A program made the position numbers and the translations under genes. From positions 62,001 to 126,000 of the forward strand of contig NW_026865856.1 of the NCBI RefSeq assembly GCF_026571515.1: a stretch of DNA of 64,000 nucleotides. The letters run 5' to 3'. This stretch comes from Ruditapes philippinarum. Lineage: Eukaryota. Each line of letters begins with the position of its first letter. Positions within the stretch are counted from its first letter, which is position 1. Below, piece after piece: positions 20,070 through 54,515 of the stretch. Under the pieces are notes generated by a model. That model was given only the letters and a program-made list of their open reading frames with translations. It did no database searches and was not told where the DNA came from.

Positions 20070-20520
20070 AAGCAGAAAATCTGACGGACAATCCTACCAT
20101 ATACATTATTCAAAACAAGGCTTTAATTAAAGAACTAACGTAACTATTTGATATATAAGTATAGCAACCATTCCAGTAAACAGTTATGATTTTTGAATTC
20201 ACTTAAGTCTCCTACAAAATGAAATTATTTCTACCTGAACTGAATTTACCTGTCCAAAAGGTAAATAATGTAACCAAAACCAGTATCGCAAGAAAAACGA
20301 CATTTTTCTACTAATATGTGGATACGAAAGTAGTTAACAAAACTATTAGTGCTTTATAATTCATTCTGTTTGAGTGGTTTTCATTCCATTTTCCAAATAT
20401 TTTACTCAAAATTTACAATCAAAATACTACGGAAGTAAGTTTGGGCATACGCAATTACTCATACCTTTACGGTAAATACATTTCAAGAATTAATTATTTT
20501 ATCGTAAATGAAAAATATAT
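20070..20520 (-). pseudogene. Inverted remnant of gene B promoter/exon 1 (B')
   Basis: Reverse complement of ~48390-48860. ATG at 20364 reads MNYKALIVLLTTFVSTY*; the first donor is mutated (ACAG|GT > ACAT|AT). A short B intron-1 homology also occurs near 18005-18045, but I found no B exon 2. Confidence 0.8.
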
Positions 20521-20844
20521 TCTTCATACGCGATGCGTGACAGTGTCATTTTTGCATTAATTTAATGAAACATATTTAAGCGGTGATAATATAACCTAAA
20601 GTTATTTCAAGCTTACGGGTGCTGGATAAGACTTAATTATATAGAACTACTCGCCCATAGAGAATACCTTCAATATTTTTCAAGACGAAGTGTATGCATG
20701 TAAAAATGATGACAAAAGTTGAAGTGTTATATATATCACTGGTAGAATAACTCCTGGGGTAGGTTCGTTAATTTAATACATATGCAAATATAAATGCTGT
20801 CTAAAATATTTCGTGTAAAATGATTTCTATATACAAATATTTTG

Positions 20845-20900
20845 TACCTGAAGGCACGTGATACAGGTGACACAAACAAGTTGAATATTCCGGAAGTGAA
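20845..20900 (+). promoter_or_regulatory. Gene A proximal promoter: E-box CACGTG and ETS-like CCGGAAGT
   Basis: Motifs ~100-140 nt upstream of the ATG; also present at 32375-32425 (A3) and 46665-46715 (A4, -), where the ETS-like site reads CCGGAAAT. Confidence 0.5.
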
Positions 20901-20990
20901 TTTCAACAATAAATAGTTTAATATTTCGATACTTTTAAAGAATTTGTTTTAAGTTACAACGTAATCAACCGCTGCTGATCAACCAAGAAC

Positions 20991-23900
20991 ATGTTTAAAA
21001 GTTGCTGGATCATTGCTGCTGTTGTCGCAGTTCACCTGATCGGCACAGGTATTTTCCTTGTGAAATCAAAATGGCGCTCATGATATGAAAATGTAACTCA
21101 CAAGCAGAATAAGCGACTGATGCCAGTATTGGAAAACTTTGACAGCTCTCTTTCTTTATGCCCCAACAATGTGGGAGCATGTAGCGTTGCACTTGTCCGT
21201 CCGTACGTCCCGAAATCTTGTGAACGCAACTCCTCTTAAACCGGATGGCAGATTTTGCTTAAATTTACAGGGATGAACAACCTTAATGTGTAGATGGAAG
21301 TAAAGGAAGGAAATTTTGCTGCGACCAAATTTAACAGAATTATGGCCCTTTGTTGATTTTTTCACTATATACTATGTAGAAATTTTGTGAACGCAACTCC
21401 TCTTAAACCGGATGGCAGATTTTGCTTAAACTTACAGGGATGAACAACCTTAATGTGTAGATGGTAGTAAAGGAAGGAATTTTTGCTGCGATTAAATTTA
21501 ACAGAATTATGGCCCTTTATTGACTTTTCACTATATACTATGTAGAAATTTTGTGAACGCAACTCCTCTTAAACCGGATGGCAGATTTTGTTTAAACTTC
21601 CAGGAATGAACAACCTTAATGTGTAGATGGTAGTAAAATAAGGAATTTTTGCTGCGACCAAATTTAACAGAATTATGGCCCTTTGTTGATTTTTTCACTA
21701 TATACTATGTAGAAATTTTGTGAACGCAAGTCCTCTTAAACCGGATGGCAGATTTTGCTTAAACTTCCAGGGATGAACAACCTTAATGTGTAGATGATAG
21801 TAAAGGAAGGAATTTTCGCTGCGACCACATTTAACAGAATTATGGCCCTTTGTTGATTTTTTCACTATATACTATGTAGAAATTTTGTGAACGCAACTCC
21901 TCTTAAACCAGATGGCAGATTTTGCTTAAACTTCCAGGGATTAACAACCTAAATGTGTAGATGGTAGTAAAGGAATGAATTTTTGCTGCGACCAAATTTA
22001 ACAGAATTATGGCCCTTTGTTGATTTTTAGTTTTCAACTTGTGGCACATGTAGTCCAAAAAATATTTGACCTAGACTCATAAGATTGACAGAACAGTGGC
22101 GTGTGGGGGCATCCGTGTCCTATGGACACATTTCTAGTTTTTGTTATATAATGAAAATGTTCGTTGAAAACCTAGTAGAAAACAATTTAGATAAACTTTT
22201 AATAACTTCTAAAAAACCTTTAACAAATGAAGAAAATATGAAGCTGATTATTTACATAAATTGCTAATACAGATTAACTTAAATGTACTGAATGGGGATC
22301 AAGATACTTTACTACCTAGACTTGCCAAATCTAGATATTCTGAGACATTTTTATTCTGGGTCAGAAGCTGGCTCTTTGCCCACAATAATTAGTGCATTAC
22401 AATAAGTTGGGTAAAGAGTCAACTCGGCCCTATATCAACGGGTCAACTCGGCACATGTCAACTCAGCCCACTTATGAGGAAAAAAACATATTAAACGTAT
22501 TAACTTTTATATTACTGTACTTGCATGTTATCAAGGCAAGTAGTTTCAAATGAAAAATAAGAGATATCTGGTATATTTTTGTTATAACCTCCTCACAGTG
22601 ATTACCTCCCTTGGCAGCATTGTACTGATAATGGGAGATCTCTGCGTAGGAGATGATATTATTTTATAACTGTACATAGTACTTCTGTAGAATTAAAGTA
22701 TATTTAGAAGAAATTTGTTTCGTTTCTTCTTGCAGATTCGTAAAAAAATTAGTTTTTAGTTTTTTTTGTAAAGTAATCTTCACTAAAATATCAAATACGT
22801 CACTTATTATTATAAAATATTTTTAAATGTTCTTTATCTTATATACATAAAACAACATGTAATGCATTTATTAACATGCAATGTATTTTGCAATGTCACA
22901 AGGATGAATTATAATAAGTTTTTATTACCCAAATCATTGAAAACTCTTTCATTACCAAAAATGTAGTAATAATTTATGAAAACATCTTTCCACGTTTGTA
23001 AATAAGTCCATATATTAATTATTTGGTTCCAACAATAGTGATAAAACCAATATATCAATAAATTGAAAAGTGGGCCGAGTTGACCAGTGCCAATGCTGGA
23101 ATAGAACCGAACTGACTCTGGGGGCCGAGTATATTTTAGGGCCGAGCTAACCCTGATTCATTAGTTGGACTATTCACTCCCAAACCAAAGAAATTGTGAG
23201 CCAGAACATTTAATTATATATACAACAGTCACAGAGTTAATATTGAATATAAATCAACCTTTTATTATTTGTTTATTTTGTTCCTTTTAATAATTTCTGA
23301 TAAAATGTGTACCAATTTTATTATTTTGTTTTACAGTAAAATGTCAGCTGGACCCAGAGATTGTAGATGAGATTATACCAGAAGTTACATCACAGGGCGG
23401 ACAGGCAAAACTTAACTGTACTGTGGTAAATAAGCAGGATGCTCATACTGTAAGTATAAATAATTATTACTTATTAATATTCAGAGTCAAACAGTCTAAT
23501 AAACTCTCTTAATGTAAATATTTACAATGAGAATACACTCAAGAACATTGCCTCAGAGTTGATATGAACTGCGTAAATTACAAAGAAATATTGAATGAAA
23601 AGGCATGAGTTATCTGTCTTGTTTTGCGATCATAATTATATGTTGATCACTGTATTCTAGAATATGTTAACGATATACATTTGTAAAGTTTACAAACATG
23701 TTACATGTATTTTATATGTATTTAGAATCCAACTCTTGTGCACTGTCCACTAAATTAGTTATTAATTGAAATAATGTATAGATGATGTTTAGATGTATGA
23801 AATGCTCGTGTTATTTTGACATAATACTTCGATTACATGTATTAACTATTGTTTTGTAAATTAAGTATATGTTTCGTCACTTCCATTCCCTTTTTGCGCA

Positions 23901-26900
23901 TTTTTGATCGAGTGATTAACTGCACAATCTCATGTTGTATGAAATAACTATACAATATTATTATGATAACATTTTTGAGATAGCCATTTTTCCTTCCAGG
24001 TAATTTGGGCATTTTTAGATTCCAAGTCCGGTGGTGAAATTATTACCACTGATGAAAACATATTTGTTGAAAACAAAGTTTGTAAAGAGGGCTCAAAGAA
24101 GTACGGTATAGTAAAGCGTGAATTCAAGAAGCGTATAACGTACATGTTGGTGATTAACTGTTTAGAAGTCGTGGATTATGGTTACTATAAATGTTATATT
24201 CAAATCAGAGGCTCGGCATCATGGCCTTCAAAAATAGGGCATCTTATTGTCCAAGGTAAATGTAAATTATATGTAAATTATTCATCATTTAGATCTTTAT
24301 GTAGAAGTTGTACATCAATTTATCTGGTATTAAGATATAAATGTACAGAATAGATCTTTGTGTAGAAATTGTGCATATAGTTGTCAACTTGACTGGCTTA
24401 GATATAAATGAATAAATTGTCTTTGACCTCTTCTTAATTACTAGACTAGTCTGTAATAATATTGCAAATATTGACAAATTAATCTACATATAATTGCATA
24501 TGTTGACTAATTGAATTAATTGTTCATTTAAATAAAACAATAATGTTAATTAAGTTATGTGTTTTAATATTAATTCATGTAGTTATTAATTGGTTTGGTT
24601 GAAGTATGTCAGTACCTTATTATATATGATGCTGCAGGTGCTTTAAATCAGTATACATGTATATATAAATGAAATGTTAATTTGAGTTAAATCTGCCACT
24701 CTTGTTTATTGTGATATTAATATTTCTTAACTAATTTTATCATATTTAAGTTCCGCCAACTATTACCAGCAAGAACGTGGCAGTGTTACAGCTGGACGTG
24801 GGTCACTCTCACAACCTTGAATGTTCTGCGACAGGCGTACCCGCTCCAAATATAACGTGGATCCGGTCAGACGGAGGACTTCTTCCTGGATTAGATGCCG
24901 CTCAACTAAGGGTAGGTTCACTTGATTGACATGATACTTGTTGAATTATTTGATTTTGTTTGTAAAAATTATTAATTATTATAAGATTTCATATAGATCG
25001 ATTTTTATTGACCTTATTGATTGCCTCATAATTTTGAGATATAGACACACATTTCATAATTTATCACTGTTGATAATTTTTACCACCTATAACATTCAGT
25101 CAAATTTTTATATATAGTATAACATACTAGTATAGTAGAAACAAAATGTTCTCAGTAAATGATTGTCCATATTCTCCTGTGTAATATATCACTTGATAGA
25201 TCTTGTCTAACAGTTCAAGGGTCTGACTTTGGCTTACTTGCTCATTTTATCTTGCGCATTTCTTAAATTGTCCATACGATATTTATATAGTAAATTATCG
25301 ACAATTTCCGCTTGCCCATACAGGTTGTGGGGCAACCTGGGTAATACTGAGGATTAATTTTGCTGTCCCCGACAGTTCAAGAATTAAATGTAATGGTAAT
25401 TTTAAATTGAGGTAAACATTATTATATAGATATAGGATAATATTAAGGAAGAAACATGTATAATTTTAATCTTCCCTTTCTTTTAACACTTATAGTCTTA
25501 TATCAATATAATATTTGCTTTTTGGCATGATTTATCTATTTTTGGTATGCAATTATTTCAGAACACCACATTACCTTTAAAGAATGTAACAAAGGAAGAC
25601 CGAGGGCTGTATAAATGTATTGCAGATAACCAGGTCAGGCCGCCAGATGTATATCTTGTCTCACTAAGCGTCTTCTTCAAACCTGAGACACTTGCTGTGC
25701 AAGATACTGTCGGGCAAGCTCAAAATAGACAGTTTGATGCTAAGCTAGAGTGTCGAGTATCAGGTAAATATTTAAAATAGTTTGCTTATTTCAGTACCTG
25801 TCCGTATCATTTCTTTCTGATATTTTTATATTAAATACATACCTATCATGTTTTTCAATTTTTTAGCAGTGCTTCCCTTGTTTTCTTTACAAGTATCTGA
25901 CAAATTCTCCATTTTAATCAACAGAGGATGATTAATCGTGGTGTAACAGTATTGTCTTCAACTAAATTGTCACAGATATACAAGAAATATTAATGCAAGA
26001 TATAGTTTTTTATGTTTCTCTGAAGGACAGCTTTGTATTTATAGGGGTTACATTCAACAATGTTTTTGAGAAAATTCTGGAAACAAAGTGAAACATTAAT
26101 CACAACAAAATAACATAAGAATTGCAGACTCGGTTTGATTGAGTCTGTACATGAGGGATAGTGAATAAGTGCAACATCACTCACGCCCCCTAGCACCGGC
26201 TTGAGCGGTACTCAATTCTCAACACTTTATAGTGAAGAATTTAATATAAAGAGGTTATATTGTTCTATACTAACAGGTTATCCTGAGCCGGAAGTGGTGT
26301 GGTACAAAGAGCCGACCAGAAGTGAAGGAAACACGCAATTAATACAGCTAAATGACAATGAGAAATATGAAATAACAAAACTCATTGCCACAACGACATT
26401 ACGTTTCCAAGAAGCCTGGTATGTGCTCCGAATTAAAAACGTGGAAGCAAACGATTACACCAAATATTACTGTGTGGCAAGAAACAGAATTGGAGAAAAC
26501 AGACACACAATTATTGAGCTTTTTGGTAAATTTATAAATTGTGCTTCTTAAGTTTTCTTATTATTGTTTTCTTGTGTATGTTATAGGCTATGGATAAATT
26601 TTGGTTAATTTCTTAAACATACAAATGTTTATTGTCTGTAACAAGTGTTAACTGTCTGTACCGATTGTTTACTGTCTGTAAAACTTGTCTCTGTCACAGG
26701 CTTTGAGCCTGACCAGCATGCAATAATAGCATATCCATTTACTGCGTATCAGGCTCTATACAGTTGACTGTCTCATTTTTGGTTTTGAAATCCTGCATAT
26801 TCAAAACTTGACAAATTTAAATTTGAACTAGTCTTTCACACAGATAAATCATGGCAAGGACTATTGCCTGAAATATGTTTTGTCTATAAAAAGAATCAAG

Positions 26901-27370
26901 GATGAAAATGATGTGTGCCAAGGTATATATTGCATATACATGTATACTTAAATGACAAAAACGTGCAAGAACAAGAAAAATAATATTAAAAAAATAACCG
27001 ACATTAACTGATTTTTGTCATTTTAATATAATGCTGACCAGTTTCTCTTCTCTATCATCAGGGCAAAATATATATTATATAAAGTTCCTTCAGACTTTGA
27101 AAATCATTAATTATGAATGTCTTTACGTCCAGTAAGCTTTCATTTTACTACATGTATCACATCAGAGTTCAGCAGTGTAAATAGTTTGGATTGGATATTG
27201 AAAAAAATCTAGTTTAACTTTATTTCATTTTTTTGTTCACTTTTATTTCAGAAACAATGGAGTGTCAAGGGGCCAATTGTCCATCTTTCGAAGCCCAAGG
27301 TGCCTCAGCAATCTCTGTATCATTGTTGGCAACAGTTGCTATGGTTACACTCGCAAAACTTATGTTGTAG
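20991..27370 (+). CDS. Lachesin/IgLON-like GPI-anchored 3-Ig cell adhesion protein, gene A copy A2 (intact, 7 exons, 385 aa)
   Basis: Exons 20991-21048, 23337-23449, 24000-24255, 24751-24911, 25562-25763, 26277-26525, 27252-27370; all GT-AG with compatible phases, 1158 nt open frame. Signal peptide MFKSCWIIAAVVAVHLIGTVKC; Ig motifs LNCTV..VIW..DYGYYKC, LECSATGVPAPNITW..DRGLYKCIADN, LECRVSGYPEPEVVWYK..DYTKYYCVARN; lachesin-like LFETMECQGANCP then a hydrophobic C-terminal GPI signal. Confidence 0.92.
21155..22138 (+). mobile_element. Non-autonomous Helentron/HINE (pearl-like) element with ~5 tandem 166-167 bp repeats, in A2 intron 1
   Basis: Starts TTTATGCCCC, GTCC microsatellite, units begin at 21219, 21386, 21552, 21719, 21886; ends GGGGGCAT + hairpin GTGTCC-TAT-GGACAC + CTAGT in a T-run; empty site in A3 (~32675) and A4. 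Confidence 0.85.
22411..23159. mobile_element. MITE with reiterated GTCAACTCGGCCC subterminal motifs in A2 intron 1
   Basis: Three GTCAACTCGGC-type motifs at the left, inverted GGGCCGAG(TTGAC) motifs at the right; candidate 9-bp duplication ataagttgg / attagttgg. Confidence 0.6.
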
Positions 27371-30300
27371 CTGTGATCTGATTGGCTCTTAATTACATAT
27401 TTTTGTTAGTAACACATGATTTGAAAATGTATTTAGAAAATATTAACTAAATGTGAAAACTTATAAAAAATGGATCATCTATCAATATTAAGAATTAAAA
27501 ATGCTTTTATCCAGTAATAAAGATAATGAATGGTTGAGGAAAGGAATGAAATTTTAGTGAAAAGAAGCTTATAACATAATTTTTTTTTGTATTTATGCAT
27601 CATGTAAGACGTATAATCAATATAAGATTATATTTTGTTTGCAATATTTGAAATGTAAGCAGCAAAATATGTTTGACATGTTAGAATCTGTTTCATGGAA
27701 TTAAGTAATGAATTATACGTTCGACTCAAAAATTTATTTCTTTTAAATGTTATAGATAGATCATGGTACTCGTACATTTTTGTTAATTTTATAGCATTTT
27801 TAGTTTGCAATCAATAGCTATTTCTGCAGAAAATACATGATATAGTGATAATATCCAAATAGAAAGAAATGAACATTTCTGATGTATCAAAATAGAAAGA
27901 TTGAAGAAAAAAATTCCTGATTTTTTAAAATTCTTTAGTGATATCCATTTTTGTACATATGTGTATATTATTAATTGTAGAAACATGTATACAAAGTTAC
28001 ATATCATATCGATTTTATAAACATTATATTTTTATATTTTTTAATTCATCTTCATTTGTATAATAAGTCAAAATTTCATATTTTCTCATCCATTCATTCA
28101 TGTATACATTCAAGTATGAATTAATCCATTAAAACAGATTTTCAGTTAGAAGTTCAATACACAAGAAATATCATAGATTCTTACAAGAAATGTTTGGGAA
28201 AAGATTTTTTGACCCATTTATGATAACTTTAAATTAAAAAGACTCAAATTTTTAGGAAATTTTTTAAGAAATTGAATAATGTTGATAAGGCGTTTTGGTT
28301 AATAAATAAATTATTTTTATTATTTGATTTATTCTCAACTTTCAACATTTTTTTTCCTAGGAATATCACATTACACACAATATATAATATTTATTTATTT
28401 TATATAATACATTTTCTAACATTCCAATAGAAAGATTTATAATTTTATTTGTCATTACAATCCTATGTAAAGTTAGAGTTCACTTTTCTTTTAATTGATT
28501 TGTGCATATAACTTGCTTTCCATAGTTCATTTGTGCCATATGAACTTTCAGGAGTATATTGTCATGGTCAAATATCATAGCTGTAGCTATAAATACAAAT
28601 AAGTCACTGGGTAAAAATCTAGGCCAACTATAAACAATGGTTGTTTTTATACAAAAAGGTAGGTCATCAAGTCAAAATCTAGGTAAATGAAACTATTTTT
28701 ATAGCTGTGTACCTGTTTACGAAAATTAAAATTTTAGCTCAAAATGCAAACAAGAAATGTCGAACGACACATATGCCCCCCTTTCTAGCCCTTGACTCAT
28801 ATTATTGGTAATTTTGTTATAGAAACTTGCCAAAAACGTGTACATGGAAGTGTTCAGTTATGGAAAAAAATGACCTATTTGTTATAACCAATTAATATGT
28901 GAAATTTATTAAGACCTTTGATATAAAGTTTTCACGGTAATAAGTGGAAATCATTCATACATTCAAGGCCGCTCTGACCTTGACATTTGAATTAGTGATC
29001 CCATTATCAATAGGGATTATCTACTACATATGGCCTTTCAATATGTGAAATATGAAGACTTTGTGATAAATAATTTTCAAGAGAATGAGCCGAAACCATT
29101 CTGTCTTTTAAGGCGCACCTATGACATAGACCTTTGACAAAGGGATCTCAAAAGGGGTTATCTACAATTTATGACCAATCAATATGTGAAATATGAAGAG
29201 TTTGTAATAAATAGTTTTCAAAAAAAAATAAGCAGAAACCATTGTGACATTAAGGCCCCTGTGACTTTGACCTTTGGACTAGCAATCCCAAAATCAATTG
29301 GGGTCATTTACTAGTTATGATCAATCTCTATGTGAAATATGAAGACTTTGTGATATAAAGCTTTCAAGATAATGAGCAGAAACCATACTTACAACAAGGC
29401 CCCTGTGACCTTAAACCTTGTGACCCCAAGATCATTAGGGGTTATCTACTATATATGACCAAATACTATGTAAAATATGAAGTTTGTAATAGTTTTCAAG
29501 ACAATAAGCGGAAGCCATTATGACATTTAAGGCCCCTATTACCTTGCCCTTTGAACTAGTAACCCCTAAATCGAAAGGGGTCATCTTCTAGTAATGGCCA
29601 ATTACTATGTGAAATATGAAAACTTTGTGATAAACACTTTTCAAGATAATAGGCAGAAACAGTCCTAACATTTGGCCCCTGTGACATTGAAATTTGACCT
29701 AGTGACCCCAAAATCAATAGGGGCTTTATGAAGATAAAAAACAACATATTTTTGTATTTTTATCTGGGATTTTTTCTCTGTGTATTCTTGACCTTGGGTG
29801 CAGGGACCTGAATTCAATGCGCAACATTCAGCCTCACAATGATGAAAATGTGTGCCAAGTTATATTAAAATCTTTCAATTCATATAGAAATATTACTCTG
29901 GACAAGCATTTTTAAAGAGATTCAAGTGTGACCTTTGACCTAGAGACCTTGTTAATGTGTGCGACACGGCTTCTCATAGTGGTGAACATTTCTATGAAGT
30001 TTCATTAAGATCCCTCTGTGTGTGTACGAAAACTGATATGCTCTGCACAATTTTGCATGTTGCCTGCCCGCCAGGGGCATTCCGATAATATATCTCATTT
30101 GAACTTTCAAACGGGCATATGAAAAAGGTCACTGGGTCATGTTGGAACTTATTTGTCCCCAATTGCTATAATTTGAACAAACTTGGAAGAAGTCAACTAA
30201 ACGATGTTTCTTGCCAAATATTTAAGCTATAGCTAAGATGATGACAGAAAATAGACACAACCTTTTTACAATAACGCAAAATCAGCATGTTGTGCTCAGG

Positions 30301-34736: not shown

Positions 34737-35050
34737 CACTGCGAAAAATATACTGATATACGGGAATATACGGTCCCGTATTTTTGACAAATACGGGCGT
34801 GTACGGGATGTATTTGTCGAATATACGGACCAAATATACGAGTCCGTATAGGGAACATCGGGTATAAGGGAAGTCCGTATATGCATCAGGCGTATACGGA
34901 ATTCCGTATTTGCCCCATATACATGTACGTTTTATTTGTTCGTACTTTTGAAGTATACGGAGAATAAAATTCCGTATACAGAATTTATCAAGGTTGTTAT
35001 CCCTAGTATACTATAAATATACCAGGGATATACGGGACCGTATTTTCTAC
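34737..35050. repeat. TATACGG/CCGTAT motif-rich segment, probable MITE end
   Basis: More than 10 dispersed ATACGG/CCGTAT motifs in both orientations after CACTGCG; no matching other terminus found. Confidence 0.5.
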
Positions 35051-35059
35051 ATATACAGA

Positions 35060-37880: not shown

Positions 37881-38150
37881 GGGGGCGTCCGTGGCCGAGT
37901 GGTTAAGATCGTTGTCTTCAAACCACTAGCTCCTCACTGCTTTGGGTTCGAATCCCGACAGGGACTTTGAATTCTTTCATGTGATGCAGCTATCCAGCTA
38001 CGGAACATCGGTGATTCTACTCAGGTACCCGTTCGAGCCTGAAATAATGCAAAGAAGGGCACCTGAGGTCTTCCTTTACCAGTAAAGCTGGAACGTCGAC
38101 ATATGACCTATACTGTGTCTGTGTGACGTAAAACCCAATAAAACAAACAA
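37881..38150 (+). mobile_element. tRNA-derived SINE, family 1, same insertion site as 3467-3744
   Basis: Same body, same ATATTTGA duplication and same flanks as the 3467 copy, so it was duplicated with the segment. Confidence 0.88.
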
Positions 38151-45400: not shown

Positions 45401-46573
45401 TCATGGCTGAACTTGTTGGGGATCCGGCGTCCTTCAAAAAATTCATTTTAATCGGACCTGATGTGTCTCGGGGTTTGGACGCGATTTGGCCGAATCCTCT
45501 CCACCAAAATCATTGAACTCTGCAATTTGTTTTCTAGGTGTTCTTTTTTTCTTGTGAGGCATTTTGAAAATGAGCATGCAAGAGGTTGCGGACGGAGGTA
45601 TTAGGTCCGTATAGATCAGTGGCAATTCGTTCTTCTCCGTATCATAATCAATTCGCTCTTCTCCGTATCAGACCGTACTTATTCGTACTAACCCGTGCTT
45701 ATACCGTAGCAGACTGTAGTGTGTCCGTCCTGATTCGTGTCGCTCCGTATCAAACCGTGTCGGTCCATAACAATCCGTGTCTGTCTGGGGGCTTTTGGTG
45801 GTAAATCCGTCGGACTCCGTACTCATACCGTTGTGTGTCTGTACTGGAACTGTAGCAGACTACGGAATTTTACATTTCCGTAGTAACCCGTGAACAATTA
45901 GACTGTAGCTCTTCCGTGGCATTATCCGTGAATATGTGACCGGGGCATTATGAATGTTGGGGCTGAAGTGTCTGTTGATGTGTGATTTGTTTTCAAAATT
46001 TGCTGGGTGAAGTGTCTTTTATAGGCTCGATTGAATATAGTCTCAATATTTCGGCTGCAAGACCTACATTATGTAGATGTTTGTCTTTCCGAAGTGTAAC
46101 TGTTGTATATATATGATAAAATGTTCTGACTCACAATTTGTTTGGCTTGGGGATTGAATAGTCCAACTAAATGTACTGCACTGATTATTGTGATATTTTG
46201 TGTATGGGCAAAAAGCCAGCTTCTGATCCAGAATATCTAGATTTGGCAAGTCAAGTTAGTGAAGTGTCTTGATCCCCATTTAGTAGTCGCAAATTATTTA
46301 TGTAATTTAGCTTCATATTTTCTTCATTTGTTAAATGTTTTTTAAGAAGTTATTAGAAGTTTATCTAAACTGTTTTGCTCTAAGTTTTCAAAGAACGTTT
46401 TCATAATATAACAAAAAAGAAAGAAAGCTGTCAACGTTTTCCATTACTGGCATCAGTCGCTAATTCTGCTAGTGTGTTACACATGAGCGCCATTTTGATT
46501 TCATAAGGTAAATACCTGTGCCGATCAGGTGAACTGCGACAACAGCAGCAATGATCCAGCAACTTTTAAACAT
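39471..46573 (-). CDS. Lachesin/IgLON-like gene A copy A4 (intact, 7 exons, 387 aa)
   Basis: Exons (-) 46516-46573, 44129-44241, 43283-43544, 41823-41983, 40973-41174, 40230-40478, 39471-39589; same exon sizes as A2 except a 6-nt in-frame insertion in exon 3 (IRGTGSAS); canonical splice sites, no stops found. Confidence 0.92.
42035..42829. mobile_element. TTAA-flanked MITE (Kolobok-like GG..CC termini) in A4 intron 3
   Basis: TIR GGTATTAG(C/G)ACCCTAATG at both ends, TTAA on each side (42031-34, 42830-33), absent from A1 and A2 at this position. Confidence 0.75.
44380..45947. mobile_element. PIF/Harbinger-derived non-autonomous element in A4 intron 1
   Basis: ~40-bp TIRs (CCCCGGTCACATATTCACGGA..CCACGGAAGAGC), TTA duplication (44377-79 / 45948-50), empty site in A3 (~33040), many subterminal CCGTA motifs, relic RRQTRWWTRDVLLRR..YEAIMAEL..SFKKF (~45330-45450) resembling a Harbinger transposase N-terminus. 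Confidence 0.82.
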
Positions 46574-46929
46574 GTTCTTGGTTGACCAGCAGTGGTTGAT
46601 GACGTTGTAACTTAAAACAAATACTTTAAAAGTATCGAAATGTTAAAACTATTTATTGTTGAAATTCATTTCCGGAATATTCAACTTGTTTGTGTCACCT
46701 GTATCACGTGACTTAAGGTACAAAATATTTGTATATAGAATTTTTTTTAGACGAAATATTTTAAACAGCATTTATAGTTTAGTAAAACATGATACGCTAC
46801 TGTATATAATGATAAATAGCCTTTAAAATATGCGACATACTAATGAACATTGTATATACTATTTCTAAGTGTCAAATGTATGCCAAAAGGATAAAAAAGA
46901 TTTTTAATAAATAAATATGAAGCTCTATA

Positions 46930-47021
46930 AATTATGTAAAAAAAAAATTTCCACTATCAAAATTATAGTTATAGATCTAACTATAATTTTGATAGTGGAA
47001 AATTTTTTTTTTTATATAATT
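46930..47021. repeat. Near-perfect ~43-bp-arm inverted repeat (6-nt loop) between A4 and B
   Basis: aattatgtaaaaaaaaaatttccactatcaaaattatagtta-TAGATC-taactataattttgatagtggaaaatttttttttttatataatt. Confidence 0.9.
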
Positions 47022-48474
47022 TCATCGGTGGTTTTGTATTTGGTACCTTATAGTAAGCCTTAGAGTGTTGAATTATTTTTTTCAGGGTTGTAGTAGGAGT
47101 ACAGGGGCTGATAGGGGTGGGGTGTCCAAACACTGATACTGCCACCTGTGTATTTAACAAGTTAATATATATAACAACTATTACAGCGTTTCAACACGGA
47201 GGGCGAGTGCCATGCAACAACGCTACTCACATATAAATACGTGACCCTTGTGATTAATTTTCACTGATGAAAAATGATTCTTTTGCATTTTAAACAGTCT
47301 TTATTTTGGGTATGTCATGAATAGGATAAATATATTCGTGTATAAGGTGAACTCATTAATTACTGAATTTATTGAACTCGTTTAATAAATTCAGGATTGA
47401 ACCTAACGTACGTTACACTTAGTATAACGCACGCGTCGGGATAATAATCAAACAATGTTTGTGATATTTTGGTTTCATCTTTACAAAATTTAAATCTGAG
47501 AATGCGTGTTCTTACAGTTCCTTCTTTCTTTTTTTACTAATTCCAAGTATTGATAATAATGAATGTTTTAGAACCATGATTTGTAATTTAGCTAAATCCG
47601 ATATTAAGTTTATGCCTTTAAAAGATTGATCATTTTGTGTTTATAATATATGTGATAATTTTTTTTAGTCGAAGCAGTTACATACTTTTAGTTGATAGCT
47701 GAACATTTACCTTTAAATTTATCAGTTATGTTTTGGAATAATTCTCGCAGTACCCCCCCCCCCCACCACTCCCTCCCCCACTCCCCTCACCAATGTACTT
47801 ATTATAGTAACTGAATATTTAAATTTACTGAAAATATCGCTTTATAATACGTATACTGTTTGCATTCACCACATGTCATGTTTTTTGAAATTTGCATTTA
47901 CTCTGTAATCTCATATGTCTATTGATTTGTTCTGTTCTGTTCTGATATAAAACTGTTTCAATTCAAATGCTAGTTTGTAATTCAAGTTCCAATCTTTTAT
48001 AATTCAAATTTTGATCTTTTTTGATGATATGGATACAGCAGTTTTAAGACAGCTGTTTTTTAGAGGAACCTCCTGGCAGGGGAGAATGTCACGGGTTGCT
48101 TTAATTACTTGTTACGTTCAGTCTGGGACAAAGAATAATTATGAGCATTCATTTTGCTGTATTTGTCAATAAACGCGGGAAAATAATGCTTTATATCTGC
48201 GCACGCGCCAATTATTGTTTGTTTACGTACGTAGCGTCTTTTGTCGTATGCTTTCCATTTCATTCATTTACTTAAAATAGTGCTTACATTTGCATTTGCA
48301 TCTCTCTATTATTGTAGGCCTAATGTTGTAGTGAATGTATTTTTTATATCGTATTATAATATACAATGAAAATGTCACACAACATACGTATGAAGCGGCC
48401 TTTCCTAAGAAGAAAATATTTTCGTTTACGATAAAATAATTAATTCTTGAAGTGTATTTACCAAAAGGTATGAG

Positions 48475-48505
48475 TAATTGCGCATGCCCAAAGTTACTTC
48501 CGGAG
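48475..48505 (+). promoter_or_regulatory. Gene B proximal promoter: NRF1-like TGCGCATGCCCA and ETS-like ACTTCCGG
   Basis: 65-90 nt upstream of the B ATG; both motifs carry substitutions in the B' remnant. Confidence 0.4.
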
Positions 48506-48568
48506 TATTTTGATTTGTAAATTTTGAGTAAAATATTTGGAAAATGGAATGAAAACCACTCGAACAGA

Positions 48569-51500
48569 ATGAATTATATAGCCCTAATAGTTTTGTTAAC
48601 TTTCGTATCCACAGGTTAGTAGAAAAATGTCGTTTATCTTGCGATACAAGTTTTGGTTACATTATTTACCTTTTGGACAGGTAAATTCAGGTAGAAATAA
48701 TTTCATTTTGTAGGAGACTAGGTGAATCATTGCTTCTGCTTCACAAATATTTTTTAACGGAATGGTTGCTGACTTATTTCAATTAGTTACACTATTTCTC
48801 AACTTTAATTGAATACTGTATATGGTAGAAATACCTGGCAGATTTTCTGCTTTCCACCTGCAGACAGCTTTGATCAATAATATATATGAAATTAGGCAAA
48901 GCCTATGATCAGGGAAGTCGGTAAAAAAAATTGTTCATTTTTCCATTTTAAAGGAGTCATTCGGTATTTCATGCACAGCTTCAGTTTTCACTCTGAACAC
49001 TTGACAATTATCATTGATCCGAACAGTTGCGATTGTTCCGTTGTCGGAATATTCCACTTATCATGATTGAATTATTTTGAAATGTCAGCGTCCAACTAGA
49101 TCTGATACTTAAAATTTCATGGATAATCAAGATTAGGTATAAAATTTTCTATATTTTTTAATTGTTTTTTATTTGATTTCCTTTTTAATATTACACAGTC
49201 ATGTAGTATATAGCCCGGGCAAGCCAAAACGTCGAGGTCCCAGCCTTTGCCAAATCCCCGTATAAGTTGGTGATTACATGGGGAAGTCAAATTGTGGGCA
49301 CATGCTTCCAATAACAGACCAGTCACAACTTTATGCCTAAAAAATAATTGGCTAGGTGTTCCGATTAAAAACAGAAGCGGTGCTTGAAATACCAAATGAC
49401 TCTTTTAAAACGAAAATTGTAAAATAAAAATGAACATTTTTTTTTCTTCTGACTTAATTCCCTATTCATAGACTTTGCCTACTTTCATATTATAGATCTA
49501 TATCTATCTTCCATTAATTTGAAAACAAATCATATGGTAGTATATTGTGAAAGACAATGATTTTATTTTTTCTATAGTATGGTGTGCTGACCCGAAAGTT
49601 GTCCTTAGGTACACATTTCCAAAGACTGTGATCAGAAGTAACTACAAGACAGTTGTCGTAGAAAAAGACAGCGATTGTTTTTTGGCCTGTATTGTGGATA
49701 ACAAACCGGCTGATAAAAAGGTATGGTGATTGTTTTTCAAAAATTTATACTTATTATAGATAGAGAGGTGCATGCCTTGTGATTGACATGTCTGTCTCAC
49801 AGTGTACTGCTACATGAATCTATGGTTAATTCAGTAATGACATTCCTTTGGCCAAATTAGAGAAAAAACTATGACTATTGTAGTTGGTCAGTGAGTAAAT
49901 TCAATAAAGTCTTCTTGAAAGTTGTCAGTACACATATTCCCAACAATTTAATAGATTTATTTATTGTATATGTTCACAATAGCAAAAAGCCAGTGTTCAA
50001 ATAAATAGATATTAATAAAAAATGTTTTTTTGTTTGTTTTATTTCAGGTTCAATGGTTGGTACAGAACTTCCGTACAAACACACCCATTCCTATATCTAC
50101 TGATACAGACACTCAGAATGCCTTCAAATATCAGATAGATAAGCCTGCCGCCAACAACTGGCGCTTGAAGATCCAGAATGCTCAAGAGTCAGACCAGGCT
50201 CTCTATATATGCAGAGTCCAGCTTGGCGGGCAGCAGAACGCTAACGACAGTCGTATGATACAAGTTATTCGTAAGTATTTGGGGTTTTCTCTTTATAGTT
50301 ATATTTAAAATTCTTTTTGATACCGCTTTCAAGAGAATATGCTCATTTCCTTCGGTGTCAAGTCAAGTTGAATTAGTAGTATGTTTCAAAAGATTGGCAA
50401 TTACTATGGTCCTTGAGGGAAATTGTTTAAGATACAATATAAAAATTTATCTAAATTATAAAAAGACTGCCCCACTCATTTCAAAACCTGAGCATTTCTG
50501 ATGTATTCTGAATGATATTTATAGAAATTTCTTTTGGTTGTTGTTTTGTTTTATTTTTCATTGTAAAATATAAAATTGAACACAATTATGGCAAAATGTC
50601 ATGCTATTTTTATTTTTACCTGTTTCTTTGGCCATTTACTCTCGGGTCACGCTCCCTTCACAGCTCACTGAATACACTTGCGTTACTTCAGACAGTGAGC
50701 GATAGTTAAACATCCGACAGATGCTCAGGAGAGTACACTTGGATGGGCATAATACCACTTTGTCGTACCAGCTAGCAATGAAATAGAGAATATCACCTCC
50801 ATAAGTAATAACTGATTAACGCCAAGTTCCTACTGTCACAATTGAAACATGAAAATTTTATCTTATATTTTCAGAGAAACCACAGATTATCGATATCTTT
50901 ACAAGTTCTAACACAATCAAGAAAGAGGGTGACCCTCTAGAACTGACTTGTGATGCTAGTGGTATCCCAAAACCTGTCATCAGCTGGACTATGGTGGGAG
51001 GTGGTGTCCTACCAACTGGGGGGAGAGAGCTCACTGTAAGTTATAAATGCCATTCATCTGTATGCTTTGTAATTACCGAGAATATCTATCTTAACACTTA
51101 CTTCACTAAATACTAAGTCTTGTACCTTAAAATAATGAACTTACCCAAAGTAATTATTTTTTCAGGAAAATTTCAATATAACTAACTCAACCCTAACTTC
51201 TCATAACATTTTAAATGGACTATTCTTCAATCTGGACAAAGCCATTCATCATTTTTGGGGAAAAGTTCAAATATGTTCTGAATAGCCTTAACAGTGCAGA
51301 CTATAAGCAGCTTCATTACACAAATTCAACAGGTTAAACCTGGGTTTAAAATATCAAAATGATTTCATGGATTATAGTTGTGCCATGGGGAATTGTTATA
51401 TCAATTTGTGTGGGTGCTTTTGATAATTAAACCCAAACAGAACCTGAAAGAAATGTAAAACTTTTTCTTGTGTTAAAATGGTACTCAAATAAAAAAATAT

Positions 51501-54500
51501 CAATAATATAATTAATAATAATGATTGATGGAAACATGTCTTGTGTATATTTTATCTAAAAGCAAATATAAATAGATTGTGTGTTAATGATTTGACTGTT
51601 TCCAGGCGCCATCTATCAAGGTTGACAGTGTGGATAGGGACATGAAAGGAGCTTATAAATGTAAAGCTGAGAATATTGCGGGAACCGATATCCGTAGCAT
51701 ATACCTCAATGTACAGTGTAAGTAAAGATTTTTATTTTATTTAAACTTTGTCATAGTTAGTCTGCAAGGTTGTTCAAATTACTTGAAATACTGTCACCCA
51801 GGGTTCAAATCTTGCATAAGATGTAAACCAAGCAATTCAACCATTGCAATTCAGAAACTTGGAACTGCAAAACCTTTGCCACCAGTAAAAAGCTTTTTCT
51901 GTTTTTTATCGGTAATTTTTGCAACTAGTAAAAAGCTTTTGCCACCAATAAAAAAGCCTTTGCAACCAGTAAAAAAGCCTTTGCCACCAGTATAAAAGTC
52001 TTTGCAACCAATAAAAAAGTATGCCACCAGTAAAAAAACCTTTGCTTAAAAAAAGACTTTGCCACTAGAAAAAGCATTGGCCACCAGTGAAAAAGCCTTT
52101 GCCACCAGTAAAACGTCTTTGCCACCAGTGAAAAAGCCTTTGCCACCAGTAAAAATAGCCTTTGCTAACAGTAAAAAAGCCTTTGCCACCAGTAAAAAAG
52201 CCTTGGCCACCACTAGAAAAGCCTTTGCTAACAGTAAAAAAAGCCTTTGGGACCAGTGAAAAAGCCTTTGCCACCAGTAAAAAAGCCTTGGCCACAAATG
52301 AAAAAGTCTTTGCCACCATTATCCAGTAAACTTCACCAACAGTAAAAACACCTTTGCCACCAAAATAAAGGCCAGTCTGAATAACATTTTGTTGTTCTGA
52401 AAATATTTCACTAAAAAGTAATTTCTTCACAGATTTATAAATTGATTTTACGAGAATTTGAAATACCTTACTTTTCTTTATTGTTGCATTCGTCTTCTTT
52501 CAGTCCAGCCTCAAGTAAGGGCCAAAGAGGAGGTAGTAGCACAAGCTGTGGGCTATAGTCGTGAACTGACCTGTCTGGCTGCGGGTAACCCAGTTCCTGA
52601 TGAATCACAGATGTATTGGTCTAGAGATGGAGTACCATTGGATGATAGAAACAAGTAAGAAATTGTTAATTAAATGCAATCTATTTTGTAGAAAATCTGG
52701 CCATTGAATGTTTTACATTTTATGTTTTGTATTGATTTTGAAAACATAAGAAAAGATTTTCCCCAGAAGGGAAAGTAACAGATGTCTTATCTATGAAATT
52801 GGTGGCAAACATATTAATTAAAATTGTCGTCTTTCATGCTGCACATGTATGTGATTCTGCAAACTGTATTAAACCCTAACCTTTAAGAAATTGAAAGTGA
52901 TAAGCCTGGCTAATAGCTTGATTTCTGTATTTTGACCGGACTGTTCCATATTGAAAGCTGGGCAAATCAATTTCACAAATTTCAGCAGGTAAGGATCAAT
53001 ACTCAATAGCAGATTATAATATGTAGTTGTATGTTGTTGTTTTTTTTGTTTTTTTTTTCAAAAAGTCACATGTATACAAGTTAACCATACATAAATCTGT
53101 TACATGTGTCAGTGGGATTTAAAACCCAACCAAAATATTTTTTTTTAAAGTGAAGACTGAAAATAATGCACATTTTTTTAACATTTCAATGCCTGTTTAT
53201 ACAGGTGTTAATTATATATTTATAAATGAAATATTGATGAAATAAAATGTGTATTTTCATTTCCGTATTTTTACTGTAAAACTTTATTTTTCACTGCAGT
53301 GGAATATATTTTCCATAGTTTCACTGATGTCTTGCCAGACTACTGTCATCTAAATTAATCAGTTTCCAAACTTTAAAGGGGTAATGTCAGAAAAGAGAAA
53401 AATGTATATAAAAAACAGAAAATTTATGTTTTTTTTCTATATAACACTTGATGAAAATAAATCCTGTATTTATAGAAAAAAAACCTTAAATATCCCCTAT
53501 TTATTTGTAGATACGCTGAGGAGTATTACTTTGGGTCGAACTACGTCTTGATGAAACTGATTATACAAGATATTACTGAGAATGATTTCGGACAGTACAG
53601 GTGTTACGCTGAAAACATTGAGGGAAATGAGAATGCATTTGTTGAGCTACAGCGTAAGTGGTCTTTATTGCATTTTATTGGTATATCAACAGATATTAAA
53701 TTGTTTACAATTGATATTTATATTTGACCATTTACAAAACTGAATTTCTTTATGGACATGTTCTTCTGGTACCAAATTGTGTGTTATTCTAAGGGATTTT
53801 TTTATTATCAAAGACCAGTAACCAACAGTAAGGAATATGATTGTACAGAAAGCATAGAAGATATGGGAGCGGGGCTAAGTTTTATTCCGATGGAATTGGC
53901 CTGACCAAATTATTGTAGTTTGTGCTTAGAGACACTGAATCCATTTGTTAAAATAAATAATCAGGATACACATTGTCTGATAATACTGTATGTTTGTAAC
54001 AATGATTTTCATTGGATAAAAATTATCATGATGTTTAAACGATGCTACATTATAACATATTTCTTCAAACATGGCTGCTACAAATTTATGACCTTTAATT
54101 TTCATCATTTGTGACGTTTAGTTTTATATACATGACTGTTGTCAATTTATGAAGAAATCTCGCTATTTTCTGTATAAGAGAAAATTTGCTGTATTATAAA
54201 GTCATTATAAATATTCTTGACCGGTTATATGACCGTATATATAATTGGTAATGGTTGTTTTCAATATAACCCTTGTCTAGTGGCTCTGGTTATAACTTGT
54301 TTAAAATGTTTATAACTGATCATTAATATGGAGACATTACAAGAAATAATTATTTTGTTCAAAACATGTAGTTTACAGCAATTTTTTTCTTCTGAATTTC
54401 AGAGTCGTCATCGCAAGTTATTGAGCGGCCTGGTATGAGCGGCAGTTCCATGTTAACTTTCAGTATAACAACAATAACAATGTTGGTGGTGACAGTGTTG

Positions 54501-54515
54501 CTGCACTGTTGTTAA
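48569..54515 (+). CDS. Second lachesin/IgLON/DIP-like GPI-anchored 3-Ig protein, gene B (8 exons, 363 aa)
   Basis: Exons 48569-48614, 49578-49720, 50048-50270, 50875-51035, 51606-51717, 52504-52654, 53511-53653, 54403-54515; phases compatible, 1092 nt. Signal peptide MNYIALIVLLTFVSTVWC; Ig motifs FLACIV..VQW..WRLKIQNAQESDQALYIC, LTCDASGIPKPVISW..GAYKCKAEN, LTCLAAGNP..DFGQYRCYAEN; C-terminal SGSS followed by a hydrophobic tail. Exon 1 is the least certain. Confidence 0.88.
51868..52368 (+). repeat. ~21-22 bp minisatellite (AAAAAAGCCTTTGCCACCAGT)n in gene B intron 5
   Basis: Roughly 20 degenerate units directly visible; source of the spurious LLVAKAF/KKPLPPV ORFs. Confidence 0.9.

What the first reader, a model, noticed from the sequence alone, without database searches (positions are those of the whole stretch)
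20070..54515. Head-to-head pair of GPI-anchored 3-Ig genes (A/B), duplicated as an inverted module: candidate cell-recognition locus
Seen: intact A4 (-) and B (+) start ~2 kb apart facing away from each other; both encode signal peptide + 3 Ig + GPI signal but are highly diverged from each other. The same divergent arrangement recurs inverted at 20.1-21.0 kb (B' remnant / A2). Established: lachesin, IgLONs and Drosophila DIP/Dpr are GPI-linked Ig proteins that bind homo- or heterophilically, largely through Ig1. Inference: A and B may be a co-regulated partner pair, with A expanding by birth-and-death while B stays single, as expected of a variable adhesion or self/non-self code. Function cannot be shown from sequence.
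Basis: partly seen in the sequence, partly recalled or inferred. Interest (0 to 1): 0.8.

Follow-up and report, generated by a model that had tools for sequence, protein, structure and literature searches.

The report
Clam lachesin-like adhesion gene cluster
A Manila clam locus holds two nearly identical working copies and two dead pieces of a conserved lachesin-like cell-adhesion gene next to a very different three-Ig gene; this is a real but ordinary local gene duplication, with no sign of a variable recognition code.

Summary
A4 (-, ATG 46573, stop 39471) and B (+, ATG 48569, stop 54515) face away from each other with 1,995 bp between their start codons. An inverted older copy of the module gives A2 (+, 20991-27370) beside a dead B exon 1 (20364-20317). 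A1 is a pseudogene and A3 holds only exons 1-2.

A4 and A2 are already in RefSeq as 'lachesin-like [Ruditapes philippinarum]', XP_060572510.1 (387 aa) and XP_060572516.1 (385 aa). All 7 exon translations of each match exactly.

The A family is found across molluscs. Its AlphaFold model is closest to DIPs and IgLONs.

Three points go against the interpretation:
- A2 and A4 differ at 14 residues plus a 2-residue indel, with dN/dS 0.11, and A4 is 94% identical to the Mercenaria protein. That is conservation, not a variable code.
- B is not single: an intact, anciently diverged paralogue (B2) lies about 36 kb downstream, outside the window.

One oddity remains. The shorter copies in both clam genera share three states, two of them in Ig1.

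Verdict: real, a new member of a known kind, low interest.

The parts
39471..46573 (-). A4: intact 7-exon gene for a 387-aa lachesin-like protein (signal peptide, 3 Ig domains, hydrophobic GPI-type tail). Coding exons: 46573-46516, 44241-44129, 43544-43283, 41983-41823, 41174-40973, 40478-40230, 39589-39471.
   Evidence: Codon and splice-site reading. 7 of 7 exon translations are exact in P0202 = XP_060572510.1. AF2 model has pLDDT 86.4 with three beta-sandwich domains.
48569..54515 (+). B: intact 8-exon gene for a 363-aa protein (signal peptide, 3 Ig domains, hydrophobic tail) that is very different from A. Coding exons: 48569-48614, 49578-49720, 50048-50270, 50875-51035, 51606-51717, 52504-52654, 53511-53653, 54403-54515.
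   Evidence: Codon and splice-site reading. Pfam V-set, Ig_3 or I-set on 5 of 6 tested exon stretches. Exon 3 is conserved at 68-91% in 9 exon-sized proteins of other assemblies. Exons 3, 4 and 7 match the corresponding domains of DIPs and IgLONs in order.
46574..48568 (.). Spacer of 1,995 bp between the A4 and B start codons. About 206 bp next to A4 and about 163 bp next to B are shared with the A2/B' module. The remaining 1,626 bp is not shared and includes a high-copy palindromic MITE-like repeat at about 46929-47173.
   Evidence: Local BLAST. Own-genome DNA search gave 81 matches, nearly all to query positions 150-394 and on both strands; 40 of 1,890 candidates were scored.
20991..27370 (+). 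A2: intact 7-exon paralogue of 385 aa. Coding exons: 20991-21048, 23337-23449, 24000-24255, 24751-24911, 25562-25763, 26277-26525, 27252-27370.
   Evidence: 7 of 7 exon translations are exact in P0204 = XP_060572516.1. Against A4: dS 0.158, dN 0.018.
20317..20364 (-). B': dead copy of B exon 1, 626 bp from the A2 start codon. It has the ATG and a hydrophobic leader, but a 3-nt insertion and no GT donor. Part of intron 1 follows (18007-18151), with no further B exons.
   Evidence: tblastn at 94% identity. Side-by-side sequence of B and B' exon 1. Self-BLAST match 18007-18151 to 49516-49376.
18007..29371 (.). Arm 1 of the old inverted duplication: B intron 1 and exon 1 remnant, spacer, A2 and its 3' flank.
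   Evidence: Self-BLAST, 76-91% identity to arm 2 in reverse orientation.
36757..49516 (.). Arm 2 of the inverted duplication: A4 3' flank, A4, spacer, B exon 1 and intron 1.
   Evidence: Self-BLAST.
32365..33778 (+). A3: 5' fragment of an A2-like copy. It has exon 1 (32517-32574), exon 2 (33180-33292) and part of intron 2. Homology stops at 33778, before exon 3.
   Evidence: tblastn hits for 2 of 6 A4 exon stretches. 93-96% DNA identity to A2. Sequence reading.
4773..8591 (-). A1: pseudogene holding exons 3-7 only. Exon 3 has a deletion with stops, exon 4 a frameshift, exon 5 an insertion with a TGA, exon 6 a TAA and a donor changed from GT to GA, and exon 7 a 3-nt insertion. Exons 1-2 are missing.
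   Evidence: codon reading. tblastn hits for 4 of 6 A4 exon stretches. Stops also flagged.
35478..36401 (+). Piece of a non-LTR retrotransposon ORF between the A3 fragment and the 3' end of A4.
   Evidence: Pfam zf-RVT, E 1.1e-08.

Best explanation
This is a small cluster of Wirin-type cell-adhesion genes (the lachesin, IgLON and DIP kind) in the Manila clam.

A is the clam's version of a roughly 380-aa protein found across molluscs. It has a signal peptide, three Ig domains, a conserved Cys-rich stalk motif (F-E-T-x-E-C-Q-G-x-N-C-P) and a hydrophobic GPI-type tail. B, and B2 just outside the window, is a second, very different three-Ig gene of the same broad kind.

Shown here: one inverted segmental duplication of about 12.8 kb copied the unit 'B exon 1 and intron 1, spacer, whole A gene and its 3' flank'. 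This produced A2 next to a B exon 1 that has since lost its splice donor. Later partial copies of A2 gave the decayed A1 and the truncated A3. Both intact A copies are kept by purifying selection.

Inferred from what is established for DIPs, Dprs and IgLONs: the proteins sit on the outer membrane leaflet and bind like or unlike partners through the first Ig domain, probably on neurons, glia or epithelia. The head-to-head position of A4 and B most likely reflects how the cluster arose. It is not evidence of a partnership.
For: Gene models and identity:
- Exact exon-by-exon identity of A4 and A2 to RefSeq XP_060572510.1 and XP_060572516.1, which sit on a contig of 232,759 bp, the length of this window's contig.
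- Duplication arms and breakpoints. A1 defects and the A3 truncation.

Selection and conservation:
- A2 against A4 over 383 aligned codons: dS 0.158, dN 0.018, ratio 0.11.
- A exons 3, 5 and 6 hit only this locus in the 1.41-Gb assembly: 3 of 16, 3 of 8 and 4 of 8 scored candidates, all on this contig.
- 39 relatives at E<=1e-20 among 3,032 candidates, from bivalves, gastropods and a chiton, plus a cephalopod (Argonauta). Source names among the 39: 7 'lachesin-like', 2 'amalgam-like', 1 'LACH-like', 2 'I-type lectin-like protein 3', 1 'neuronal growth regulator 1', 1 'limbic system-associated membrane protein', 8 hypothetical or unnamed, and 17 Logan proteins with no name.

Structure and family:
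- AF2 model has pLDDT 86.4. Foldseek ranks 1-4 are DIP-theta, DIP-eta and DIP-alpha (E 4e-27 to 4e-25). Ranks 5-10 are NEGR1, OPCML and IgLON5 chains, apart from LRIG1 at rank 9.
- By sequence, the Unionid homologue P0017 matches OPCML at 3e-21 and DIP-alpha at 7e-21 as single collinear stretches.
- Cheng et al. 2019 (PMC6525511; passages read) state that Wirins bind through the GFCC'C'' face of Ig1 and expanded in molluscs.

B and B2:
- B Ig1 aligns to A Ig1 starting at the same intron position (hhalign probability 79%, E 1.6e-5).
- B against B2: 219 of 340 residues identical, pS 0.89, pN 0.26, so both are old and constrained.
Against: - No expression data were obtained, so transcription start sites and any shared promoter are unknown.
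- GPI anchoring rests on the shape of the tails alone.
- The subfamily of B was not placed. Only exon-sized relatives without names were found, and exon-level PDB hits are led by generic multi-Ig proteins.
- The head-to-head unit was copied as a unit, and about 160-200 bp next to each start codon is retained in both modules. A shared regulatory region is therefore not excluded.
- The short copies of Ruditapes and Mercenaria share three states. That hints at two maintained forms and not pure redundancy.
Confidence: 0.72

Rival explanations
1. A and B are a co-regulated receptor-ligand (or cis-partner) pair driven from a shared divergent promoter. A diversifies by birth and death into a variable adhesion or self/non-self code.
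For: - Head-to-head arrangement with 1,995 bp between start codons, and only 626 bp in the older-looking A2/B' module.
- The duplication carried B exon 1 and the spacer along with A.
- 7 of the 14 substitutions between A2 and A4, plus the indel, fall in Ig1.
- DIP/Dpr and RIG-5/ZIG-8 are heterophilic pairs within this superfamily (PMC6525511 passages).
Against: - dN/dS is 0.11 overall and 0.14 in Ig1 exon 3.
- There are only two intact A copies, 96% identical. A is 94% identical between clam genera.
- B has its own old paralogue, B2, with no A-like exon nearby: no A4 exon stretch gave a family-level hit in 162 kb of flanks, only a 48% match over 29 residues on a B2 Ig exon.
- There is no expression or binding evidence of any kind.
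Confidence: 0.1
2. Two maintained specificities. The long-loop form (A4-type) and the short-loop form (A2-type) predate the split of Ruditapes and Mercenaria. Gene conversion homogenises them within each species, except at a few selected sites in Ig1 (end of strand C', FG loop) and one in Ig2.
For: - Both genera have one long and one short copy: 387/385 aa and 386/384 aa.
- 3 of the 4 sites that differ within the Mercenaria pair coincide with 3 of the 15 that differ within the clam pair. Both short copies carry the same states: T at column 74, an FG loop shorter by 2 residues, and L at column 192. P is 1.9e-4 over 387 columns, or 2.6e-3 over the 160 columns that vary in five other species.
- By strand assignment in the model, column 74 and the FG loop lie on the sheet that Wirins use for binding.
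Against: - The ML tree groups the copies by species (clam pair 99/98).
- The three sites are among the more variable columns of the family, so parallel change is possible.
- No clear conversion tracts: exons 1 and 7 are nearly identical, but with too few sites to be significant.
- No Mercenaria DNA could be examined.
Confidence: 0.25
3. Assembly artefact. The A copies are alternative haplotypes or a mis-join, not paralogues.
For: Bivalve genomes are highly heterozygous (recalled, not from a call). The best DNA runs hold only 0.29-0.39 of the sampled words of window 40001-50000. No long reads could be laid.
Against: - The copies are 78-95% identical, inverted, on one gap-free contig. They carry different repeats and different disabling mutations.
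- dS between A2 and A4 is 0.158.
- RefSeq annotates both copies, and Mercenaria also has two on one chromosome.
- No extra copy exists elsewhere in the assembly.
Confidence: 0.03

Closest known systems
Lachesin (grasshopper and Drosophila), Lachesin subfamily of Wirins
   Same: Three Ig domains with GPI-type membrane attachment. RefSeq names A2 and A4, and many mollusc relatives, 'lachesin-like'. Cheng et al. 2019 report two Lachesin paralogues in molluscs (passages).
   Different: The name comes from automated annotation. I did not place A or B in a phylogeny with insect Lachesin. The mollusc family carries a conserved Cys-rich stalk motif before the tail (invariant T350, C353, Q354, G355 and C358 in 44 sequences), and I have not checked whether Lachesin has it.
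Vertebrate IgLONs (OPCML/OBCAM, NTM, NEGR1, LSAMP, IgLON5)
   Same: Same three-Ig layout. Collinear sequence matches: P0017 against OPCML 3e-21, NEGR1 1e-18 and NTM 4e-18. Foldseek ranks 5-10 and 16.
   Different: 21-24% identity. IgLONs are the deuterostome branch of the family. A's Ig1 is poorly covered by the sequence matches, which start near residue 97.
Drosophila DIPs and Dprs, and C. elegans RIG-5 and ZIG-8
   Same: DIPs are the best structural matches of the A4 model: ranks 1-4, TM 0.63-0.70 on target length. B exons 3, 4 and 7 match the corresponding parts of DIP-eta, DIP-theta and DIP-alpha, and exon 3 also matches RIG-5 and ZIG-8 weakly. The family is known for heterophilic pairs.
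   Different: There is no evidence that A and B bind each other. Nothing I read describes DIP and Dpr genes as head-to-head pairs. B's matches are weak, with E from 2e-9 to 0.1 per exon.
The two 'lachesin-like' genes of Mercenaria mercenaria (XP_045209937.2 and XP_053409073.1)
   Same: 93-94% identical to A4. Also one long and one short copy on one chromosome, sharing T74, the shorter FG loop and L192 with A2.
Divergent (bidirectional) gene pairs
   Same: Head-to-head genes with a short spacer that was duplicated along with one of the genes.
   Different: The usual criterion of start sites less than 1 kb apart is recalled, not from a call. Here the start codons are 1,995 bp apart and the transcription starts are unknown. 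Part of the spacer is a repeat insertion.

Membership tests
Wirin family (IgLON, DIP, Dpr, Lachesin, Klingon; Cheng et al. 2019) | Ectodomain of two or three Ig domains and nothing else | tested here: met
   A: the AF2 model has three beta-sandwich domains between a leader helix and a tail helix, and Pfam finds only Ig families. B: Ig families on exon stretches 3-7.
Wirin family | Closest relatives are DIPs, Dprs or IgLONs. The paper uses a reciprocal best-hit rule and monophyly in an ML tree. | tested here: inconclusive
   A proxy test against solved structures is positive for A: Foldseek ranks 1-8 are all DIP or IgLON chains, and phmmer gives collinear matches to OPCML and DIPs. No reciprocal search against fly or human proteomes and no tree with outgroups was run. 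For B only exon-level matches exist.
Wirin family | No cytoplasmic signalling region; GPI or similar attachment | tested here: inconclusive
   Both proteins end in a hydrophobic stretch of 13-19 residues with small residues (G, A, S) a few positions before it, and nothing after it. In the A4 model residues 361-367 are disordered and 373-386 are helical. No GPI predictor or experiment was available.
Wirin family | Homo- or heterophilic binding through the GFCC'C'' face of Ig1 with a hydrophobic core | not testable with these tools
   This needs binding assays or complex structures. I only noted that T61A, N74T and the FG-loop indel between A4 and A2 lie on strands of that sheet by DSSP assignment.
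Lachesin subfamily | Groups with insect Lachesin rather than with DIP, Dpr or Klingon in a phylogeny | not tested
   Only automated names are available. Reference sequences from flies were not on hand. The paper's supplementary trees (SI Figs S1-S3) were not opened because supplements are closed.
Divergent gene pair with a shared promoter | Transcription starts close together and correlated expression | not testable with these tools
The start codons are 1,995 bp apart for A4/B and 626 bp apart for A2/B'.
Diversifying recognition-gene family (self/non-self type) | Many divergent copies, with excess amino-acid change in the binding domain | tested here: not met
   Two intact copies that are 96% identical. 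dN/dS is 0.11 overall and 0.14 in Ig1 exon 3. 94% identity across clam genera. No other copies in the genome.

The most novel reading that the evidence does not exclude
A and B are an ancient inverted-duplicate pair of Wirin genes that has stayed head-to-head around a shared regulatory spacer. The clam lineage keeps two A forms with different Ig1 tips (long and short FG loop, residue 74). These have been preserved since before Ruditapes and Mercenaria split, while gene conversion erased the rest of the divergence. That would amount to a small, conserved two-specificity adhesion code, possibly read by B or B2.
Probability: 0.12. Interest if true: 0.55.

Novelty: new member of a known kind. Interest (0 to 1): 0.25.

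Why it matters
If the plain reading holds, the locus is a tidy worked example of how IgSF adhesion genes multiply in bivalves. A single inverted segmental duplication carried a neighbour's first exon with it, and partial copies then decayed. It adds nothing to the known picture that Wirin-type genes expanded in molluscs.

What could matter is narrower. Two clam genera each keep one long-loop and one short-loop copy that share the same three states. This gives a cheap, testable question: do these tiny Ig1 differences change binding specificity? It also asks whether the A/B linkage is old. Both can be answered with public genomes and a few ectodomain binding assays.

Tried and rejected
1. RNA evidence. 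The look-up of sequencing runs listed four raw RNA runs and 14 small runs guessed to be RNA. No junctions, start sites or expression levels were obtained.

The linkage test was not done.

3. Naming B.
- The word search with the exon 3 stretch found 9 of 11 candidates at E<=1e-3. All were exon-sized (76-142 aa) and unnamed.
- B was not folded or searched whole, because that would need a joined spliced model. Only A could be studied full-length, through the database proteins P0202 and P0204.

4. A genome-wide I-set scan listed 151 matches dominated by giant muscle-type genes. It told me nothing about this contig.

5. B2's first exon was not found.

6. I looked for positive selection or clear conversion tracts between A2 and A4 and found neither.

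7. Haplotig or mis-assembly reading: rejected for the reasons given under rivals.

8. Literature. 'lachesin' with 'Ruditapes philippinarum' gave 0 papers. 'lachesin' with 'clam' gave 6, none about clams. 'lachesin', 'bivalve', 'tandem dupl' and 'immunoglobulin superfamily' gave 4 papers (3 listed), none relevant. A five-term mollusc, oyster and GPI search listed only Cheng et al. as relevant. An 'I-type lectin' and Littorina search listed nothing on this family.
- For PMC6525511 I read passages through 'find'.
- All other papers were seen as search listings only.
- Its supplementary figures and datasets, which hold the mollusc sequences and subfamily trees, were not opened.

Full report
WHAT IS THERE

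The window is bases 62,001-126,000 of a 232,759-bp contig in a 1.41-Gb assembly. It is AT-rich (27-47% GC per 2 kb) and has no N runs.

Reading the open stretches on both strands codon by codon, with their AG/GT borders, gives three intact genes:
- A4 on the minus strand: 7 coding exons, ATG at 46573, stop at 39473-39471, 387 aa.
- A2 on the plus strand: 7 exons, 20991-27370, 385 aa.
- B on the plus strand: 8 exons, ATG at 48569, stop ending at 54515, 363 aa.

The models of A4 and A2 are not only mine. A look-up of the 90% cluster around a Mercenaria hit returned XP_060572510.1 (387 aa) and XP_060572516.1 (385 aa). Both are named 'lachesin-like [Ruditapes philippinarum]', and both sit on a contig of 232,759 bp. 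All 7 whole-codon exon translations of A4 occur exactly and in order in the first protein. All 7 of A2 occur likewise in the second. The only gaps are the four codons split by introns. So the organism is the Manila clam, as earlier notes of this scan say, and both A genes are already annotated.

THE ARRANGEMENT

A4 and B point away from each other, with 1,995 bp between their start codons.

A self-comparison of the window shows one old inverted duplication. Roughly 18007-29371 matches 49516-36757 in reverse at 76-91% identity. The unit runs from the end of B intron 1, through B exon 1, the spacer and the whole A gene, to a satellite in its 3' flank.

In the second arm, B is represented only by exon 1 (20364-20317, minus strand) and part of intron 1. 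The exon 1 copy has a 3-nt insertion, and its donor GT is gone. None of the other 7 B exon stretches has a second copy in the window.

The two start codons in this arm are 626 bp apart. The extra 1,368 bp in the A4-B spacer is not shared between the arms. It contains a palindromic repeat of about 225 bp that occurs many times in the genome: 81 matches were listed, with 40 of 1,890 candidates scored.

Two younger, partial copies of A2 also exist:
- A1 (minus strand, 8591-4773) is 85-95% identical to A2 and holds exons 3-7 only. It has stops or frameshifts in exons 3, 4, 5 and 6 and a lost donor after exon 6.
- A3 (plus strand, 32365-33778) is 93-96% identical to A2. It holds exons 1 and 2 and stops inside intron 2.

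A1 and A3 cover complementary parts of the gene with a 480-bp overlap. They may be two pieces of one broken copy, but I did not test that.

HOW MANY COPIES IN THE GENOME

A exons 3, 5 and 6 find only this locus in the whole assembly. The matching candidates were 4 of 8, 3 of 8 and 3 of 16 scored, all on this contig.

B exon 3 finds itself, one weak hit elsewhere (E 0.005), and a 75%-identical copy 42 kb downstream on the same contig. I fetched 162 kb of flanks and found there a second B-type gene, B2, at contig 152,775-159,517. That is beyond the end of the window, on the same strand.

B2 has exons 2-8 open and 53-72% identical to B. Over 340 aligned codons, 219 residues are identical. Synonymous sites are saturated (pS 0.89) while pN is 0.26. 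This is an old duplicate, and both copies are kept. I could not find its first exon. The only A4 hit in the flanks was a 48% match over 29 residues on B2's own Ig exon. So 'B stays single' is true only inside the window.

WHAT THE PROTEINS ARE

Family A:
- The big profile-free search with A4 exon 6 gave 359 proteins at E<=1e-3. Among them were 3-Ig proteins of about 380 aa from freshwater mussels, Solemya, Mytilus, Haliotis, Elysia and Argonauta.
- A word search with the mussel protein gave 39 relatives at E<=1e-20 from bivalves, gastropods and a chiton. Where named, the names are 'lachesin-like' (7), 'amalgam-like' (2), 'LACH-like' (1), 'I-type lectin-like protein 3' (2), 'neuronal growth regulator 1' (1) and 'limbic system-associated membrane protein' (1).
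- The family is strongly conserved. A4 is 94% and 93% identical to the two Mercenaria proteins and 74-78% identical to those of Mactra, Mya and Dreissena. A Cys-rich motif just before the tail is invariant in 44 sequences.
- An AlphaFold model of the RefSeq A4 protein, built on that alignment, has mean pLDDT 86.4. It shows a leader helix, three beta-sandwich domains, a disordered stretch at 361-367 and a terminal helix.
- Foldseek against the PDB puts DIP-theta, DIP-eta and DIP-alpha first (E 4e-27 to 4e-25). NEGR1, OPCML, IgLON5 and neurotrimin follow.
- By sequence, the mussel homologue gives single collinear matches to OPCML (3e-21), three DIPs (about 1e-20), NEGR1 and neurotrimin.

This places A in the neighbourhood that Cheng et al. 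2019 call Wirins. The passages I read state three things (PMC6525511). The family expanded independently in molluscs. Molluscs have two Lachesin paralogues. Binding uses the GFCC'C'' face of the first Ig domain.

Gene B:
- I worked exon by exon and made no joined model, so there is no whole-protein search or fold.
- Pfam finds V-set on exon 3 and Ig_3 or I-set on exons 4-7.
- Exon 3 is 68-91% identical to nine exon-sized proteins from other assemblies, with no names.
- Exon 3 (as a profile), exon 4 and exon 7 match the corresponding parts of DIP-eta, DIP-theta and DIP-alpha and of IgLONs. Generic multi-Ig proteins score higher.
- A profile of B exon 3 aligns to A's Ig1 from exactly the same intron position (probability 79%).
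- By my reading, five of A's six introns have a counterpart in B at the equivalent place and in the same phase. The two mid-domain phase-0 introns are the informative ones.
- A and B share at most 45% identity over 29 residues.

So A and B are distant members of one broad kind. Which Wirin subfamily B belongs to is open.

IS IT A VARIABLE CODE OR A PARTNER PAIR?

The two intact A copies differ by 14 substitutions and one 2-residue indel. Over 383 codons dS is 0.158 and dN is 0.018, a ratio of 0.11. Ig1 exon 3 alone gives 0.14. Seven of the substitutions and the indel lie in Ig1, which is a mild enrichment at most. Together with the cross-genus conservation and the absence of further copies, this is the opposite of a fast-diversifying recognition family.

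Nothing here tests co-regulation or A-B binding. The only RNA hint is that the exact 387-aa A4 protein is also on record from a Logan assembly. I could not inspect that record.

ONE THING I CANNOT EXPLAIN

Mercenaria also has a long (386 aa) and a short (384 aa) copy on one chromosome. The ML tree groups the copies by species (clam pair 99/98).

Yet 3 of the 4 sites that differ within the Mercenaria pair coincide with 3 of the 15 that differ within the clam pair, and both short copies carry the same state at each:
- T at column 74, at the end of strand C' of Ig1.
- An FG loop of Ig1 that is two residues shorter.
- L at column 192, in Ig2.

P is 1.9e-4 over all columns, or 2.6e-3 over the columns that vary in five other species. 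Either the duplication is older than it looks and conversion has erased most of the difference, or the same changes arose twice.

VERDICT

The family assignment and the birth-and-death history of A are supported. The variable-code idea is not supported. The claim that B is single is wrong at contig scale. The partnership idea is untested.

The genes are already annotated, and their kind is known to have expanded in molluscs. In the searches listed under Tried and rejected I found no paper on this locus or on clam lachesin-like genes. I rate it a new member of a known kind, with low interest.

Noticed in passing
contig 152,775-159,517 (+), outside the window; loci L010:6775-9342 and L011:51-3517: B2, an intact-looking old paralogue of B. 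Exons 2-8 are open, 219 of 340 residues are identical, and synonymous sites are saturated. Its first exon was not found, and no A-like exon lies nearby.
   Followed up: partly
proteins P0202, P0204 (window A4, A2) and P0168, P0203 (Mercenaria): The short copies of two clam genera share T74, an Ig1 FG loop shorter by 2 residues, and L192, although the copies cluster by species in the tree.
   Followed up: partly
window 46929-47173: High-copy palindromic MITE-like repeat of about 225 bp inside the A4-B spacer. It matches on both strands at many contigs.
   Followed up: partly
window 51918-52362: Minisatellite of 21-bp units (19.5 copies, 79% matches) inside the intron between B exons 5 and 6. 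It reads as open K/P/L-rich frames on both strands but lies outside the coding exons.
   Followed up: no
window 21212-22028: Tandem repeat of 167 bp, 4.9 copies at 94% identity, in A2 intron 1. The self-comparison shows no counterpart in A4 intron 1.
   Followed up: no
window 2367-3141, 28881-29685, 36759-37064: A satellite of about 140-146 bp lies downstream of each A copy (A1, A2, A4). It marks the outer end of the duplicated unit.
   Followed up: no
window 35478-36401 (+): A 307-aa open frame with Pfam zf-RVT (E 1e-8). It is the tail of a non-LTR retrotransposon ORF, lying between the A3 fragment and A4.
   Followed up: partly
window 8106-8591 and 33289-33778: A1 (exons 3-7) and A3 (exons 1-2) cover complementary parts of an A2-like copy and overlap by about 480 bp at 91% identity. 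They may be two pieces of one broken copy. A1's homology ends about 20 bp from the transposon noted by another finding (8611-13939).
   Followed up: no
window 57.9-62.7 kb; L008, L009, L010: Blocks of several hundred bases recur between B and B2: similar open stretches at window 61424-61675 and L009:2010-2288, and at window 62155-62737, L009:3785-4187 and L010:2873-3241. This suggests repeated segments in the 36-kb interval.
   Followed up: no
proteins P0166 and P0172 (Mya arenaria): The 347-aa 'LACH-like protein' is the 385-aa 'amalgam-like' protein minus a block of Ig3. It looks like an exon-skipped or mis-annotated model of the same gene, not a second gene.
   Followed up: no
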